Assembly (NCBI GenBank): GCA_020536535.1
Contig: JAHLWZ010000751.1
Span: 113,518-177,517 of the forward strand
Length of the DNA: 64,000 nt
From: Pelomyxa schiedti
Taxonomy: Eukaryota > Protista > Evosea
Direction: 5' to 3'
Below are positions 20,717 to 57,438 of this stretch, one piece after another. Under the pieces are notes generated by a model, which ran no database searches, was not told the origin of the DNA, and saw only the letters and a list, made by a program, of their open reading frames with translations. The number at the start of each line of letters is the position of its first letter. Positions within the stretch are counted from its first letter, which is position 1. Made by a program: the position numbers and the translations under genes.

Positions 20717-20906
20717 CACCAACGACTTCAGGGTTTTTTGTCACTTAGAAAAAGCTCGATTCGGTGCGCTTTTTTGTGTTTATATTTTTTTGAGAACGAC
20801 GATGTTTAGCCGAAGAAGAAAAAAACCAAAAGTTTTGGACAAAGAATTTTTTTCTGTTACAAGCCAAAAACCAACCAGCCACGGGGCTTGTCAAGCACAA
20901 CTTTGG

Positions 20907-21032
20907 GGAGTGTGTCTTGGCAGGAAGAGTGTCCTTTTCCCTCGGTCTCATCAATCCCGCGTCGGCCAAACCAGTGGCACAACACAGGACGAGAGAGGGA
21001 GGGATAGACTCTTACCACGTTCACAAGACTCC
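20907..21032 (-). ncRNA. Conserved ~130-nt stem-loop downstream of actin copy 1 (probable structured 3'UTR element)
   Basis: Arms ggag..tcttg/caaga..ctcc and aagagt/actctt; apical gttg-gcca/tggc-cgac; homologous to 32757-32890. Confidence 0.6.
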
Positions 21033-21108
21033 TCGCCCGCAGCCGTATGTCGCCTGACTACAAGCCCCGCTTGTGTGGTTGGTTCTCGTCTGCCGGTGTT
21101 TTTTGTGT

Positions 21109-21392
<284 letters not shown>

Positions 21393-21492
21393 NNNNNNNN
21401 NNNNNNNNNNNNNNNNNNNNNNNNNNNNNNNNNNNNNNNNNNNNNNNNNNNNNNNNNNNNNNNNNNNNNNNNNNNNNNNNNNNNNNNNNNNN
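21393..21492. other. Assembly gap (100 N); true size must be larger
   Basis: More than 800 nt of actin coding sequence and its promoter are missing. Confidence 0.95.
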
Positions 21493-22005
21493 AGCAGAAT
21501 CAACCGTTAATTAAAAACCAAAGATCCAAGCCTCACAAACCAGTCACTACCAGCCTGAGCGTCACCGGCATTTTTCGTTTTTACGGCCGTCCTTTGGCTT
21601 CTGGAAGCGATAACAGATCGGTGTCGTGATTGGTACCACGAATTCGATGAGAGTCTGAGTGCCACCCACAAAGCAATGCAAGGAGGAGAGTCTCAACGTC
21701 TTGATCTACAAAATGTCTTTTCCCCAACAAGTTGGTCCTGCGGCGTTCGCTTCCTGGGTCGTTCACCGTGTCCACGTTTGCGATACTGTGGAAACATTTT
21801 CTTCTCTATAATTGCGGGCTCATCTGACTCAGTTGGCCACCGGGTCAAAAAGCATAAATTTTGAGCAAGAGAAGGCGGGTGTGCGTGCATGTTCGAACAA
21901 GGGAAAAAAAAGCGCGGTCCGTGATTTATAAGGAGGAGAAAGGGTGCAGCGTCATGTGAGACTCACTACAAACAAAAACTCAACACGGTTTACTACTGCT
22001 GGGTG

Positions 22006-32391: not shown

Positions 32392-32750
32392 TTTCCGAGA
32401 TTTGATCGTAATGACAGCTGTCAAACGGCTTTAGATTTTCTATCCAAATATTTAGCTCACCTCGTCGTTTTTATTATGCTTGTTGATGAGAGAAATGAGA
32501 TGAACCCTGTAAGAGCCCAGTACCAGAAAGGAGCTTCAACAGACGCAGAAAAAAAGAAACTTTGAAAGCAGAAGAAAAAGTTTGAAAAAGAACGATTTTT
32601 TCTGAAGCCATGGAATATCCACGTAGGGAAATAGAAAGTTGAAAGAGGGTAGGTCCCATGGCCCAATAAAAAAAAAGGTTGACAAAGGAACAGTGATTTG
32701 TTATTTTTTCTGTGCCAACAACCAAAGACGGCCAAAGCCTCAAAGGGCAA

Positions 32751-32902
32751 CGGGAAGGAGTGTGTCTTGGCAGGTAATAGGGTTTCCTTTTCCCCCTGGC
32801 TCTTTGTTCAAGTTGGCCAAACCAGTGGCACAACCCGAAACCAGAGGAAGGGGGATAGAGCCCTGTGCTTACCACATTCAACAAGACTCCTAGCACTTCC
32901 CG
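32751..32902 (-). ncRNA. Conserved stem-loop downstream of actin copy 2
   Basis: Stems cgggaag/cttcccg, ggag/ctcc, tcttg/caaga, ggtaa/ttacc, aggg/ccct, ctgg/ccag, gttg-gcca/tggc-caac. Confidence 0.65.
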
Positions 32903-32970
32903 TATAGCTGCCCAAGGAAGCTCTGTGGTCCGTATCTTTCCGGTTGTTGTCTGAAGGGTTTAGTGTGTGT

Positions 32971-34504
<1,534 letters not shown>

Positions 34505-39508: not shown

Positions 39509-40644
39509 TTACCAACGAGGGTGGAATGCCTTTAACTTGAGTGGCACTGAGAAATTACCAATGAGAAATCCAGTGACGCCATCATGCAATTTGAACTCAA
39601 CTTCAATTTCAGTTTCAGCGTCGAGTGAATTCGCTGTCAGACCCTTGCTTGAATGTGATGTAGAAAGTATGAGGCCTGATCGCTGATCAGGGGATGACCA
39701 AGTGCACGGAACCAGAATGATGGCTCTGTGAAGCTCCCATTTCTGAAGACCCAGAAGTTGGGGTCTTCTGGTGATCGCTGTACAAACACATGACTTCTCT
39801 GGAGTGTGGCAACTGTTTTGCCCTCAGGAAACACCCACCTTGTTGCCAGCGATGATGCATCAACAAGTGAGTAATGGTTCACTGGTACAGTGCCCCTAAC
39901 CAAAATGCAAGGAGAACCATCAGGCATCAAAGCCGCACCCTGTGCATTCCTCATGGGCTCACCTGCAATCTTTAATTTGACAACAAGCTCCTTCCTGAGG
40001 AAGGTGGCCTCCAAGTCAACAAAAACACTGGCATTATAGTCACCCACCAACATCAGAGTGTTATCCTCCTGAGGTAAGAATTCAACATCAAGAATCCTGT
40101 ATTCTCTGCTTTCCACAACCACTTCGCTCCCAACAGGCGCACCACCCACCACCTTTTGAATGAACAGTGACGAAGATCTTGCAGCATAAGTGCATCCCAC
40201 AATCCACTTCCTGTTGCACTGGACGTACTCGGGAATTTTCCACGATTTCAAAGCTGCTACAGGCGCGTAACTAGCATCCCACGCAGTTGCATCCTTGACA
40301 ATCATTCCAAGGCACCCACACAGGGCTTCATTTGAACAAGTGAACCAAGATATATTCACCACACCGAGTGTCGGTGACACACTCACATGCACTTCCTTGC
40401 TGTATTGCCGGTTCTTCCAGCATGGCCCCTCAAATGGGAGATCGAAAATTGCGTCCCACAATGGGGAGAGGACCCAGTCGCAGGCCCACTGCCTCACCAA
40501 CGCTGGCGACCGCGCCCACTCCGCCATTGTGGGACATGGCCCCACGCCCGGGGTGTTTGTGCCATTTACTGGAGTAGGTTGTCCCACAATTGCAGCACAG
40601 CACACCGCCATCACTTGTGCCTTGGCCGTCGTGGTTCGCATCAT
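39509..40644 (-). pseudogene. Copy B of the orphan family with a single 1-nt frameshift near 39715 (recent pseudogene or sequence error)
   Basis: Intronless; after PSF the paralog-matching PCTWSSPDQRSGLILSTS...EFKLHDGVTGFLIG is in another frame ending at 39509. Confidence 0.7.
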
Positions 40645-40699
40645 CGCAAAGGAGTACCAGTTCCTTTTTTCGTTGAAAAACAATCATCCCACATCGACG

Positions 40700-41956
40700 A
40701 TGGGTAGCACCACAACGGCCAAGTCACAAGTGATGGCGGTGTGCTGTGCTGCACTTGTGGGACATCGACATCCTCCCACAACAACACAAGCGACGGCAGG
40801 ACCATGTCCCACAATGACGGAGTGGGCGCGGTCGCCAGCGTTGGTGAGGCAGTGGGCCGACGACTGGGTCCTCTCCCCATTGTGGGACGCTGTGTTCCAT
40901 CTCCCAATAGACGGGACAACGTGGGATACAACCGGTCAGCAGCACTTTTTGTTTGTGAGTGTGTCACTGACACTTGGTGTGTTGAGCCACTCCTGGTTCA
41001 CTTGTGGTGGGATAACTTGTGATGTGTGTGGGTGCATTGGTGACAACAAGGTGCTCATGTATGTGCCCAAGAGGGGTTCTTGCGGAGATGAGCAGGCTGC
41101 AGCAGAGCACATCATCAGGGACACTGCTGCAGGAGGAGAAGCGCGGAATCCAGAGTGTCGTTGCTTGCCAGAGACGGAGGCCTCTCTCGCACAGTGGGAA
41201 CAAGTGAGGTTCACAACGTGCAACAGGAAGTGGATTGTGGGTTGCCACGTCAAGGGCTCTGCTCTCTTCATCCGCAGGGTTGTCAGTGGCTCACCTTTTG
41301 GTGATGACGTCATTCTGAAAGCAAGTGAGTTTTCCAGGGGGTTTGTGCCTCAGTTCACACCACTGGGCAATGACGTCGTGATGCTGCGTGAATTGGGTGA
41401 GCACTCAAGCGCAGCTTTGGTGTTTGTTGACTTGTGGGAAAGCTTCAACAAGAAGGACCTGGTTGTGACATCAAAGATTGTGTGCAGGACGAACTGGCCA
41501 ATGGTTGACACAGGCATCACGTGGCTTCCTGATGGCTCCCTTTGCATTTTGAAGACTGATATGTTGGGAGACCTTTCTGAAAAGAAAAACACAGATTTCT
41601 GCCTTGTTGAAGAAAAGAGCAATGCAACAGTTTGGGACTTTCCTGAGAAGCAAGTTACAATACTTGGAAAGAATCACCTGCTTGCTGCGCCCTCAATTTG
41701 GTGGTCAGGAGAGAACAGCCACTTCAAAGTGTTTCACACTGGTGACCTTGCACATCCATCACTCCATGTTCCAAGCACTTGGGCAACTGGAGAGTGGCAA
41801 TCCAGCCTCATTCTTTCAACTTCCTATCACAACCCAGAGCACACAACACCAAGTGCCCAGGAAATCGAGTTCTCACTGTACGATGGTCTCACTGGCTGTC
41901 ACATTGGTGTGTTCACTCGGCCACTGCAGAATTATCTCAAATTCACTGCTTTTTGA
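40700..41956 (+). CDS. Copy C, intact intronless orphan protein (~418 aa), probably beta-rich
   Basis: MGSTTTAKSQVMAVCCAALVG...EWARSPALVRQW...CNRKWIVGC...LYDGLTGCHIG; inverted paralog of copy B. Confidence 0.8.
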   Translation: MGSTTTAKSQVMAVCCAALVGHRHPPTTTQATAGPCPTMTEWARSPALVRQWADDWVLSPLWDAVFHLPIDGTTWDTTGQQHFLFVSVSLTLGVLSHSWFTCGGITCDVCGCIGDNKVLMYVPKRGSCGDEQAAAEHIIRDTAAGGEARNPECRCLPETEASLAQWEQVRFTTCNRKWIVGCHVKGSALFIRRVVSGSPFGDDVILKASEFSRGFVPQFTPLGNDVVMLRELGEHSSAALVFVDLWESFNKKDLVVTSKIVCRTNWPMVDTGITWLPDGSLCILKTDMLGDLSEKKNTDFCLVEEKSNATVWDFPEKQVTILGKNHLLAAPSIWWSGENSHFKVFHTGDLAHPSLHVPSTWATGEWQSSLILSTSYHNPEHTTPSAQEIEFSLYDGLTGCHIGVFTRPLQNYLKFTAF

Positions 41957-55230: not shown

Positions 55231-56167
55231 ATGAGGGTACACGAGGTGGTGCTGCCGACGATTTGGGCGACGGTCGGCACGCCGGTGGTGATTTGCGCGG
55301 TGTCGCTTCATTTCTGGGGGGACGCCATCGTGGGCACGGCCAAGGCGGCGGGCCGAGGGGGGGTCGTGGCGACGGCGGCCGTGTGCTGCATGGTGGCGGT
55401 GGTGGTGATCGCCACACGCGCCGCGTCTTCCGCGGCGTTCCAGTGGCTCGCTGCCGCGGCTACCAGGCGGCGCGAGGAGCAGGACGAGTGCGTCGGGCGG
55501 CGTGGGGCGTCGGCAAAGGCGGGGATTATGGGAGAGGATGAGGCCTTCGATGCTGCGTGGGCGGGCGAGGACGAGGACGAGGACGGGGACTGGCAGTCGG
55601 GCGAATGTGACGTAACGGCAACTGGGGGCGCGTGCAACTGCACCAACGAATGCAACTGCGCTGAAGAAGGAGAAGACTCAAAGGACGACGCGTGCACCGA
55701 AGAGGCACAGGAGGGAATCACCGCTGGAGGGGAACTTATGGGTTGTGACGCGGACTGTGCTTCCAAGAATGAAAATGAGGATGAGAACCGGCATGGATAT
55801 GTCCCTGCCGGCACTGTACTTTTCAATACCTATTTGAAGCCCAGAATTGATGCCGAACTACGGGTTTGGTTATATTCATTCGTGCATGCTGTCTTTGTAT
55901 TTTTCTTCCTGTTTCACTATTTATTGGGTGTAGGGCCATTGGACATCATTTACACACAAATTGGAGAACGAGCTGCAGGAATGCAATAAGCATTCCACAG
56001 ACTCAACCCTGAAAATGATAACTCAGCAGAACGACACAACAAGGCAGGCTGTGCTGGACATCCTCACCCCAGTCAAACAGCTCAGACAGGAGCTAAACCA
56101 AGTATCTTCCAGACTTTCATCCCTTCAAAGTGAAATGGAAAACCCACGCTGTACCAAAAAGTCGTAA
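55231..56167 (+). CDS. Hypothetical membrane protein: two hydrophobic segments, acidic/Cys region, C-terminal coiled coil
   Basis: Intron 55864-55933 joins RIDAELR to GHWTSFTHKLENELQEC...LRQELNQVSSRLSSLQSEM. Confidence 0.6.
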
Positions 56168-56391: not shown

Positions 56392-57438
56392 TCAGGTGTC
56401 GCCTGAATCTCCCTCAGGGTCCCAACAGATTCGCTGTTGGTAGTTTTCCCAGAAATCCATCAGTGATTAGAACCGTACTTAGAACTACAGCGACGCGAAG
56501 TCACCTCGCCACACACAAACAATTCGATTTCTCGTTTTAAGGTGAAGAATGTGTTGATGAAGCGTTTTCTTCATTGAGTTGTTTCTACAACTCCATGCCA
56601 ATGCGCAACTTTTCCTCTGTGATATATGAGGCCAAAAAACAAAAATGAATTGAAACGCTGTACAACGCTCCTCCGCGTCTAAAACCAACTTTTCCTGAGG
56701 AAAGACTGAGAAAAAGTTGGTATTGATAACGGAGGAGGGTTGTACTTAATATTCTCATCTCATCATCCAATCTTGAAGAACAAGCTAATGTGTAATCCTG
56801 TCAAGTTGTACTCTCAATTTAGATTGCTGTGCCGTTGTTGTGTTGGCTTCCTAGGAATGCAGGTAAAGGTCACAGGAAATGAAGAAATCAAACAAGTGAG
56901 AAGAGATAAATACCTCATTTGCAATTATCATGATCATAATACCGTTTGTGGCACAATCTAGCTCGCCAGAATACTGTTCCTCCTGGTGGTCCTGGACTGC
57001 TCGGCCCCAGTGAACCCGCAGTGAAGCTTTGACTGTAATGTTCTGAAATCGCCTTGTGACAACAACTGCCTTCCCATTGATGGCAGTCACGTGCTTAAGA
57101 AACGCCTCCTTCTTGACAGTATGTAAGTGCTAGAAACCTCATCCGCGTAAGTGCGTACCTGCCCTTCACTTGATGTAGCTGTAACCTCCGCAATGCCGCG
57201 CAATTTAAGTTCCTTCGCTACTTGCTCGCACTCTTCGAACTTCGGGCAGTACACTACAGTCAACCCACTCACCGACGCTATGCCAATCTGGCAAAGAAAG
57301 TTACCAAAAACATCGTTACTTTCACATCTTCCAATAAGCCATACCGCGTGATATAGTCTTCTTCACTAACTCCTCAATTACAACGTGAGCCATCACTTCT
57401 ACCTGGTTTACTTGCCTTCTTCCGCAAAAACTCCACAT
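56392..57438 (-). CDS. Possible degenerate SF2 helicase C-terminal-like protein (model unresolved)
   Basis: GLTVVYCPKFEECEQVAKELKLRG resembles helicase motif IV; ENYQQRI resembles motif VI; no Walker A seen. Confidence 0.28.

What the first reader, a model, noticed from the sequence alone, without database searches (positions are those of the whole stretch)
20907..21032. Conserved, covarying ~130-nt stem-loop in actin 3' flanks (copy 1)
Seen: begins 77 nt past the stop; shares ggagtgtgtcttggcagg, ggccaaaccagtggcacaac, ttaccac and acaagactcct with 32757-32890 while flanks diverge. The middle stem differs in sequence but keeps pairing (aagagt/actctt versus aggg/ccct). An apical pair that is C-A on the + strand reads U-G on the actin sense strand, which gives the orientation. 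Known: actin mRNAs carry 3'UTR localisation elements in animals; amoebozoans also make hairpin-derived small RNAs. Inference: an undescribed structured cis-element (localisation, stability, 3' end formation) or small-RNA precursor tied to actin genes.
Basis: partly seen in the sequence, partly recalled or inferred. Interest (0 to 1): 0.75.

Follow-up and report, generated by a model that had tools for sequence, protein, structure and literature searches.

The report
Conserved RNA rod on actin mRNAs
In the anaerobic amoeba Pelomyxa schiedti, every ordinary actin gene whose downstream DNA is assembled is followed by the same long folded RNA rod with an unchanging tip; selection has kept it folded, so it is probably an undescribed control element on actin messenger RNA, though its job is untested.

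Summary
The 126-nt element (20907-21032) and its partner (32757-32890) lie on the minus strand, 76-80 nt after the stop codons of two actin genes. Each is the conserved top of a 222-236-nt unbranched hairpin (20868-21089 and 32715-32950). These fold at -110 and -105 kcal/mol, z -6.8 and -5.7.

The genome is Pelomyxa schiedti. A covariance model finds 28 copies, 27 of them complete. All 27 are on the actin sense strand directly after a conventional actin coding end; the 28th is cut by a contig end. Actin paralogs sharing only 86-94% of residues have none.

The gene copies are old: 20% of third codon positions differ, and the flanks beyond the rod cannot be aligned. Yet a 14-nt tip (GCCA-CUGGUU-UGGC) and other blocks are nearly invariant.

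Several tests point to selection on a sense-strand RNA structure: compensatory changes, arm-swap chimeras, an excess of G-U over A-C mismatches, and better sense-strand folding. An A-rich, AAUAAA-like tract follows each rod, so I read the rod as the body of the actin 3' UTR. No Rfam family matches it.

Function is unknown, and I could reach no RNA data. The same scan had already noted this family on another piece of this genome (s1-589672).

The parts
21109..21393 (-). 3' part of actin coding sequence, copy 1 (residues about 240-376 of actin plus the TAA stop at 21109-21111). The rest is lost in a 100-N scaffold gap at 21394-21493.
21090..21108 (-). 19-nt A/C-rich spacer between the stop codon and the base of the rod, copy 1
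20868..21089 (-). Full 222-nt rod-like hairpin, copy 1
   Evidence: -109.8 kcal/mol, z -6.75, 0 of 200 shuffles as good. The antisense strand gives -90.3 kcal/mol, z -3.88.
20907..21032 (-). Conserved core of the rod, copy 1 (the finding as given)
   Evidence: (model R1, 109 bits)
20965..20978 (-). Apical stem-loop GCCA-CUGGUU-UGGC, copy 1. The same 14 nt occur in 24 of the 26 distinct copies analysed.
20830..20867 (-). A-rich tract just 3' of the rod, copy 1 (seven A at 20847-20853), followed by a U-rich stretch. Putative polyadenylation region; this is an inference.
34091..34189 (-). Actin exon 1, copy 2 (33 codons, ATG at 34187-34189). A GT-AG intron follows at 34003-34090.
32971..34002 (-). 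Actin exon 2, copy 2 (343 codons plus the TAA stop at 32971-32973)
32951..32970 (-). 20-nt spacer between the stop codon and the rod, copy 2
32715..32950 (-). Full 236-nt rod-like hairpin, copy 2
   Evidence: -104.5 kcal/mol, z -5.67. The antisense strand gives -99.0 kcal/mol.
32757..32890 (-). Conserved core of the rod, copy 2
   Evidence: model R1, 150 bits
32816..32829 (-). Apical stem-loop GCCA-CUGGUU-UGGC, copy 2
32677..32714 (-). A-rich tract (AAAAAAUAACAAAU) followed by the CUGUUCCUUUGUCA block, copy 2. Putative polyadenylation region; this is an inference.

Best explanation
The element is the conserved upper half of a rod-like hairpin of about 230 nt that makes up nearly the whole 3' UTR of conventional actin mRNAs in Pelomyxa schiedti. 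It is transcribed with the actin gene on the sense strand. It begins 12-32 nt after the stop codon, just outside the footprint of a terminating ribosome. It ends 5-30 nt before an A-rich, AAUAAA-like tract.

Selection acts on the RNA in three ways. It keeps the two arms paired. It holds several internal loops constant. It holds constant a 4-bp apical stem with the loop CUGGUU.

The most likely mode of action is a platform for sequence-specific RNA-binding proteins that places all 27 or more actin paralogs under one post-transcriptional control of mRNA stability, translation or placement in the cell. The tip loop and the constant internal loops would be the contact sites. The variable paired segments would act as a stiff spacer that also brings the stop codon close to the poly(A) tail.

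Shown: the structure, its conservation, its strand, and its exclusive link to actin. Inferred: inclusion in the mRNA, protein binding, and the regulatory outcome.
For: Distribution. Model R1 finds 28 matches in the 52-Mb genome. All 27 complete ones lie on the actin sense strand right after ...HRKCF-stop. Every conventional actin gene with an assembled 3' flank has one; paralogs at 86-94% identity do not.

Fold. The full rods score z -6.75 and -5.67. They are among only about six strongly folding places in 64 kb.

Age of the copies. Third codon positions differ by 20% on average. The 200 nt after the rod differ by 48%, which means they cannot be aligned. The rod differs by 27%. Even so, the 14-nt tip is the same in 24 of 26 copies. 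One exception is a compensated G-C to U-A closing pair; the other is a loop change that keeps CNGG.

Covariation in the core. 97% of cells are paired. 14 of 39 pairs show changes on both sides, against 3.7 +/- 1.4 in shuffles (0 of 500) and 2-5 when partners are slid.

Covariation in the outer rod, on an alignment not fitted to structure. 92% of cells are paired against 85% in shuffles and 33-58% when slid. 42 cells have double changes against 13.4 +/- 3.2.

Arm-swap chimeras between copies lose 16.6 kcal/mol on average, and 153 of 156 are worse than the native arms.

Nine close pairs of copies show 13 compensated double changes against 3 broken ones; 9.3 double hits of any kind were expected.

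Strand. G-U to A-C mismatches are 202:74 in a strand-neutral arm alignment. The sense strand folds better in 24 of 26 copies.

Position in the transcript. An A-rich tract with AAUAAA, AUUAAA or AGUAAA lies 2-31 nt after the rod in most copies, and all 26 are A-rich there.

Non-coding. Lengths fall evenly into the three classes modulo 3.
Against: I could reach no transcript, 3' end or small-RNA data, so inclusion in the mRNA rests on position and on the downstream A-rich tract alone.

I could examine no other species, so all covariation comes from paralogs within one genome. A pattern scan of metagenomes gave only chance hits.

A projection test between distant copies was uninformative: 44-48% of changed pairs stayed canonical, against a 41-51% background.

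For copy 2 the antisense strand folds almost as well as the sense strand.

No binding protein was identified.
Confidence: 0.68

Rival explanations
1. The rod is a processing substrate. An RNase III-type enzyme (Dicer-, Drosha- or Rnt1-like) cuts it, either to make small RNAs from the two conserved facing blocks or to destroy actin mRNA in a regulated way.
For: It is a long, imperfect double-stranded rod. The two most conserved blocks, 19 nt on the 5' arm and 18 nt on the 3' arm, face each other as the two strands of a small-RNA duplex would. The genome has Piwi-domain, RNase III and dsRNA-binding-domain genes.
Against: The loop and the internal loops are the most conserved parts, which is unlike typical small-RNA precursors. 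The conserved blocks enclose a constant internal loop of 6-8 nt that would hinder dicing. Small RNAs from it would target all actin mRNAs. I found no small-RNA data.
Confidence: 0.14
2. The rod is itself the signal for 3' end formation or transcription termination. The mRNA would end at or before it, as with the histone stem-loop or the fail-safe RNase III termination sites of yeast. It would then not be an internal UTR element.
For: It has a fixed place close to the stop codon in every copy. Some anaerobic protists have very short 3' UTRs; this rests on my own knowledge and was not tested here.
Against: The 12-32-nt spacers are A/C-rich with no shared signal. The conserved A-rich/AAUAAA-like tract and the CUGUUC...UUUGUCA block lie after the rod, not before it. 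Other gene ends in the window show no such rods.
Confidence: 0.1
3. It is a DNA-level palindrome with no RNA function: the relic of a mobile element, or a recombination or replication structure carried along as actin genes duplicated.
For: The ends of the core form an inverted repeat. Palindrome arms can be kept alike by DNA-level correction.
Against: No copy lies away from an actin 3' end. G-U exceeds A-C by 2.7 to 1, and the sense strand folds better. Unpaired loops are conserved in sequence. Alternating constant and variable blocks do not fit gene-conversion tracts.
Confidence: 0.04
4. It is a separate small non-coding RNA gene, for example one transcribed by RNA polymerase III, that merely sits beside actin genes.
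For: It is a compact, strongly structured, conserved unit. This genome is said to hold several orphan structured RNA families (earlier notes; I did not check them).
Against: Seven of 26 rods contain runs of 4-6 T on the sense strand, which would stop polymerase III (the rule is from my own knowledge). The distance to the stop codon is constrained. No copy stands alone.
Confidence: 0.04

Closest known systems
Smaug/Vts1 recognition element (SRE), bound by the SAM domain of Smaug, SAMD4 or Vts1p
   Same: It is a hairpin in an mRNA whose loop starts with CNGG. The published consensus is CNGGN0-3 on a non-specific stem (PMC4053848). Here the loop is CUGGUU in 25 of the 26 distinct copies and CUGGCU in one. 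The one stem change is compensated. The effect on target mRNAs would be control of stability or translation.
   Different: An SRE is a small stand-alone hairpin, not the tip of a 230-nt rod with further conserved loops. The consensus carries little information. No Smaug- or Vts1-type protein was identified in this genome: two of 52 SAM-domain hits were checked and look like liprin or caskin.
Beta-actin mRNA zipcode of vertebrates (bound by ZBP1/IMP1)
   Same: It is a cis-element in the 3' UTR of actin mRNA, close to the stop codon, in a motile cell type. The vertebrate element is a 54-nt zipcode that sends the mRNA to the leading edge (PMC2120214, listed).
   Different: The zipcode is a short, mostly single-stranded, two-part motif. 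Its GGACU element occurs in only 2 of 26 rods. There is no sequence similarity, and the binding protein family is an animal one (my own knowledge).
Hairpin precursors of microRNA-like small RNAs
   Same: It is a long imperfect hairpin with conserved facing segments. Argonaute and RNase III genes are present.
   Different: The tip loop is invariant and large internal loops are conserved. The hairpin is fixed in the 3' UTR of one gene family. There is no Rfam match even at E up to 10.
Histone mRNA 3' stem-loop
   Same: It is a family-wide structured element shared by many paralogous genes of one highly expressed protein family, placed shortly after the stop codon.
   Different: The histone element has a 6-bp stem and a 4-nt loop and replaces the poly(A) tail. 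Here the rod has about 80-98 base pairs and is followed by an A-rich, AAUAAA-like tract.

Membership tests
Smaug/Vts1 recognition element (SRE) | Hairpin loop beginning CNGG, with 0-3 (up to 4) further loop bases | tested here: met
   The loop is CUGGUU in 25 of the 26 distinct copies and CUGGCU in one. It forms in 25 of 26 minimum-energy folds with pair probabilities of 0.8-1.0. Consensus taken from PMC4053848.
Smaug/Vts1 recognition element (SRE) | The stem is needed as a structure, not as a sequence | tested here: inconclusive
   The 4-bp stem is invariant except for one compensated G-C to U-A change in copy C590. That is too little variation to judge.
Smaug/Vts1 recognition element (SRE) | A Smaug/Vts1-type RNA-binding SAM protein is present and binds the element | tested here: inconclusive
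   The genome has 52 SAM_2 matches. The two I checked against solved structures resemble liprin or caskin, not Vts1 or Smaug; the rest were not checked. Binding cannot be tested with these tools.
Vertebrate beta-actin zipcode | Conserved two-part GGACU plus ACA-type motif recognised by ZBP1 KH domains | tested here: not met
   GGACU occurs in only 2 of 26 rods and not at a conserved place.
MicroRNA-like hairpin precursor | Conserved duplex arms with a free-to-vary loop and only small mismatches | tested here: not met
   The loop is the most conserved part. The conserved blocks enclose a constant internal loop of 6-8 nt.
MicroRNA-like hairpin precursor | Discrete 20-30-nt RNAs from the arms | not testable with these tools
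   No small-RNA data could be reached. The machinery exists: Piwi and RNase III.
Histone-type 3' end stem-loop | Short stem-loop at the very 3' end of a non-polyadenylated mRNA | tested here: not met
   The rod is 222-255 nt long and an A-rich, AAUAAA-like tract follows it. The true 3' end is unknown.
Miniature inverted-repeat mobile element | Copies dispersed at unrelated sites with terminal inverted repeats and target duplications | tested here: not met
   All 27 complete copies lie at the same place after an actin stop codon. Only 150 of about 16,000 loose first-look candidates were scored, so weak stray copies could have been missed.
Any Rfam family (release 15) | Match to a curated covariance model | tested here: not met
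   No match at gathering scores in the whole window, and none at E up to 10 in 20820-21115.

The most novel reading that the evidence does not exclude
The rod is an independently evolved amoebozoan counterpart of the animal actin mRNA control systems. One RNA structure shared by all conventional actin genes would be read by a loop-specific protein, possibly a Smaug/Vts1-like SAM protein recognising the CUGGUU tip. That would tie actin mRNA stability, translation or placement in pseudopods to the state of the cell. If so, it would be a family-wide post-transcriptional regulon for actin in a protist, and it could push SRE-type recognition outside animals and fungi.
Probability: 0.15. Interest if true: 0.8.

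Novelty: new variant of a known kind. Interest (0 to 1): 0.6.

Why it matters
Actin is the main motor protein of an amoeba, and this species spreads its production over at least 27 genes that encode an almost identical protein. One elaborate RNA structure kept on all of them, while the surrounding non-coding DNA has diverged beyond alignment, points to a shared control step after transcription that has not been described.

The system is easy to test: delete the rod or mutate its tip in a reporter. It also offers a rare natural set of 26 distinct paralogous variants for studying how a long RNA helix evolves by compensating changes. If the tip proves to be a Smaug-type site, or the rod an mRNA localisation signal, it would show how such systems arise outside animals and fungi.

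Tried and rejected
1. Rfam. Nothing at gathering scores over the window, and nothing at E up to 10 over the element.

2. Other organisms. A three-motif pattern scan of JGI metagenome contigs gave 10 hits. None matched the model beyond the 14-nt tip, so they are chance hits. Four environmental actin transcripts at 93-95% identity have no such rod.

3. Transcript evidence. The exon-2 reading frame is not on record as a called product, and records of this genome appear to be withheld.

4. Truncated actin-tail-plus-hairpin copies as a sign of retroposition. Rejected: each lies next to a 100-N scaffold gap, and the complete genes keep an intron after codon 33.

5. Pairing between the rod base and the actin 5' UTR. 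Five of 18 leaders have a 7-nt match, against 2.9 +/- 1.5 in shuffles (76 of 500 as high). That is not beyond chance.

6. Projecting pairs between distant copies through separate arm alignments. Uninformative, because the variable segments cannot be aligned by sequence. The outer-arm alignments also gave RNAalifold too little to work with.

7. An alternative local hairpin (GGAGUCUU with AGGGCUCU) proposed by RNAalifold. It does not vary, and it is broken in copy C590. In that copy the rod-closing helix is fully compensated instead: GAGGC pairs with GCCUC.

8. Coding potential. Rejected.

9. A Smaug/Vts1 homolog. Only two of 52 SAM hits were checked, and both are generic; a third query failed on stop codons.

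10. A covariance model of the full rod with a hand-written structure. Not built, to avoid typing a long bracket string.

Full report
WHAT IS THERE

The window holds two actin genes on the minus strand, with stop codons at 21109-21111 and 32971-32973.

The two long shared motifs occur exactly twice in 64 kb, against 0.01 and 0.06 expected. As sense-strand RNA the two elements fold into hairpins of -56.1 kcal/mol (z -5.0) and -54.7 kcal/mol (z -3.6). Copy 1 folds poorly on the other strand, z -1.55.

THE STRUCTURE IS LARGER THAN REPORTED

The sequences on either side of the element differ between the two copies but pair with each other. The full structure is an unbranched rod of 222 nt (20868-21089; -109.8 kcal/mol, z -6.75) and 236 nt (32715-32950; -104.5 kcal/mol, z -5.67).

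A sliding fold scan of the whole window, corrected for G+C content, places the two rods among about six strongly folding loci in 64 kb. Such rods are therefore not a general feature of gene ends here.

ORGANISM

The genome handle has 52,367,397 bases in 5337 contigs. That matches the published Pelomyxa schiedti single-cell assembly of 52.4 Mb in 5337 scaffolds (PMC8887013). The closest named actin is that of Pelomyxa palustris, at 99% identity. That paper does not mention UTRs.

DISTRIBUTION

A BLAST search found 22 copies. A covariance model of the core (R1, built from 18 distinct copies) found 28: 27 complete and one cut by a contig end.

All 27 complete copies lie on the sense strand just after the actin C-terminal codons and the stop. 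Every conventional actin gene with an assembled 3' flank has a rod. That covers copies with at least 95% identity over the last 149 residues, including a 92%-identical whole-exon copy on C807.

Five paralogs at 86-94% identity (on C239, C132 and C200) and the more distant actin-like genes give no model hit. Their 3' flanks do not fold better than shuffled sequence.

Apparent "actin tail plus hairpin" fragments are bordered by 100-N scaffold gaps, as is copy 1 in the window, so they are assembly breaks. Complete genes have one GT-AG intron after codon 33, so they are not retrocopies.

Caveat: the genome search scored only 150 of about 16,000 loose candidates, so weak stray copies could have been missed.

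IS THE CONSERVATION MORE THAN SHARED ANCESTRY OR GENE CONVERSION?

Among 17 complete copies, third codon positions differ by 20% on average, and first and second positions by 0.9%. The 200 nt after the rod differ by 48% in global alignment, meaning they cannot be aligned. The rod differs by 27%.

Within the rod, nearly invariant blocks alternate with variable ones. The constant blocks are:
- the base helix, ACAACAACC paired with GGUUGUUGG;
- GGAGUCUUGUUGAAUGUGG;
- the tip, GCCACUGGUUUGGC;
- GGAAAAGGA;
- CCUGCCAAGACACACUCC.

Gene conversion homogenises continuous tracts, not alternating 10-20-nt blocks. I therefore read the blocks as held by purifying selection.

IS THE STRUCTURE SELECTED?

Core, on the model-fitted alignment of 26 copies. 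97% of cells form standard pairs. 14 of 39 pairs have changes on both sides, against 3.7 +/- 1.4 in shuffles (0 of 500) and 2-5 when partners are slid by 1-3 columns. This alignment leans towards the structure.

Outer rod, on a MAFFT alignment not fitted to structure. 23 consensus pairs are 92% paired, against 85.0 +/- 0.7 in shuffles and 33-58% when slid. 42 cells have double changes, against 13.4 +/- 3.2 (0 of 500).

Arm swaps, an alignment-free test. Joining the 5' arm of one copy to the 3' arm of another, across 13 diverse copies, costs 16.6 kcal/mol on average relative to the native arms, and 153 of 156 chimeras are worse. If the arms evolved independently, chimeras and natives would be equally stable on average.

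Close pairs. In nine roughly independent close pairs of copies there are 16 pairs hit on both sides, against 9.3 expected. Of these, 13 remain standard pairs.

The most divergent copy (C590) has changed the rod-closing helix at three positions with full compensation. It has also changed the closing pair of the tip stem from G-C to U-A.

One test failed. Projecting pairs between distant copies through separate arm alignments gave 44-48% retained pairs against a 41-51% background. I attribute this to the variable segments being unalignable.

WHICH STRAND?

In a strand-neutral alignment of each 5' arm against the reverse complement of its 3' arm, G-U mismatches outnumber A-C mismatches 202 to 74. 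These counts are summed over related copies, so they are not independent events.

The sense strand folds better in 24 of 26 copies, with means of -106.8 against -94.6 kcal/mol. The model scores 109-167 bits on the sense strand for all but the three most divergent copies (61-94 bits), and at most 17 bits on the other strand. It argues against a purely DNA-level palindrome.

PLACE IN THE TRANSCRIPT (INFERENCE)

The rod starts 12-32 nt after the stop, just beyond the reach of a terminating ribosome. An A-rich tract begins within about 30 nt after its 3' end in all 26 distinct copies. Exact AAUAAA occurs in 14, AUUAAA in 3 and AGUAAA in 3. In many copies a conserved CUGUUC...UUUGUCA block follows.

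This order (stop, rod, A-rich signal, U-rich block) fits a 3' UTR made almost entirely of the rod, which would bring the stop codon and the poly(A) tail together.

I could not test this. Records of this genome seem to be withheld from the protein and contig look-ups.

WHAT IT IS NOT

- It is not coding: lengths fall evenly in the three classes modulo 3.
- It matches no Rfam family, even at E up to 10.
- It is not a mobile element: no copy lies away from actin.
- It is unlikely to be a polymerase III gene: 7 of 26 rods contain runs of 4-6 T (the termination rule is from my own knowledge).
- It is not the vertebrate zipcode: GGACU occurs in 2 of 26 rods.

HOW IT MAY WORK

The most constant parts are unpaired: the tip loop and two internal loops. 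The paired segments between them are free to change as long as they stay paired. That is the signature of a protein-binding platform, not of a plain double-stranded RNA or a small-RNA precursor.

The tip displays CUGGUU on a 4-bp stem in 25 of 26 minimum-energy folds. This fits the published Smaug/Vts1 recognition consensus, CNGGN0-3 on a non-specific stem (PMC4053848). It is a lead, not a membership claim, for three reasons. The consensus is short. The rod has much else that is conserved. I did not find a Vts1-type protein: two of 52 SAM hits were checked and both are generic.

The genome does encode Piwi, RNase III and dsRNA-binding domains, so regulated cleavage or small-RNA production stays open as a rival.

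My best reading, at about two in three: a cis-acting 3' UTR structure that puts all conventional actin mRNAs under one post-transcriptional control.

RELATION TO EARLIER WORK IN THIS SCAN

The same family was noted on another piece of this genome (s1-589672: a rod of about 230 nt on at least 27 actin genes). My independent tests agree with that note in size, number and conclusion. The second copy in this window was noted separately (s1-383278).

VERDICT

The feature is real: a strongly supported, apparently undescribed structured RNA family tied to actin genes. Its function and its presence in the mature mRNA remain untested.

Noticed in passing
window 40415-40925: A near-perfect hairpin of about 510 nt (-400 kcal/mol, z -26.8), built from a dispersed and partly tandem repeat with 81 matches in the genome in both orientations. 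It could be a source of hairpin RNA or siRNA, or an inverted pair of repeat units.
   Followed up: partly
window 55241-55520 (+) and 56660-56745: Two further strongly folding places. The first is a G+C-rich stretch (0.72) at -138 kcal/mol. The second is a hairpin with 40-nt arms and a 6-nt loop.
   Followed up: no
window 21394-21493: A 100-N scaffold gap cuts the actin gene of copy 1. Several other actin loci (C171, C625, C115) are cut in the same way, so the actin family is only partly resolved in this assembly and its true copy number may be higher.
   Followed up: yes
rod 5' arm GUGGUAAG and 3' arm UAUUACCUG (window about 32866-32875 and 32770-32780): One helix of the core pairs a sequence that looks like a 5' splice site with a sequence that looks like the 5' end of U1 snRNA. 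The resemblance is recalled from memory and only partly conserved among copies. Another note in this genome reports hairpins that display splice-donor signals (s1-611425).
   Followed up: no
L045 and L048 (contig C132), 3' flanks of divergent actin paralogs: These paralogs keep CAGACAAC and GGUGUUUGGCAUAAAAACUGU around a much shorter hairpin. This may be a reduced relative of the rod base and of the following A-rich signal.
   Followed up: partly
window 34190-34330 and 17 other actin 5' flanks: Actin genes share an A/C-rich leader of about 60-100 nt, preceded by a TATA-like UUUAAG/UAUAAG box and a conserved CAAUGAA...GCUUUUUUUAG block. Five related copies also carry CAGACAAC in the leader, the same 8-mer as at the rod's 5' base.
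   Followed up: partly
L103 (JGI metatranscriptome contig Ga0439914_169975), 3' UTR: An unrelated environmental actin transcript has its own hairpin of about 70 nt right after the stop codon. Structured actin 3' UTRs may therefore occur in other protists too.
   Followed up: no
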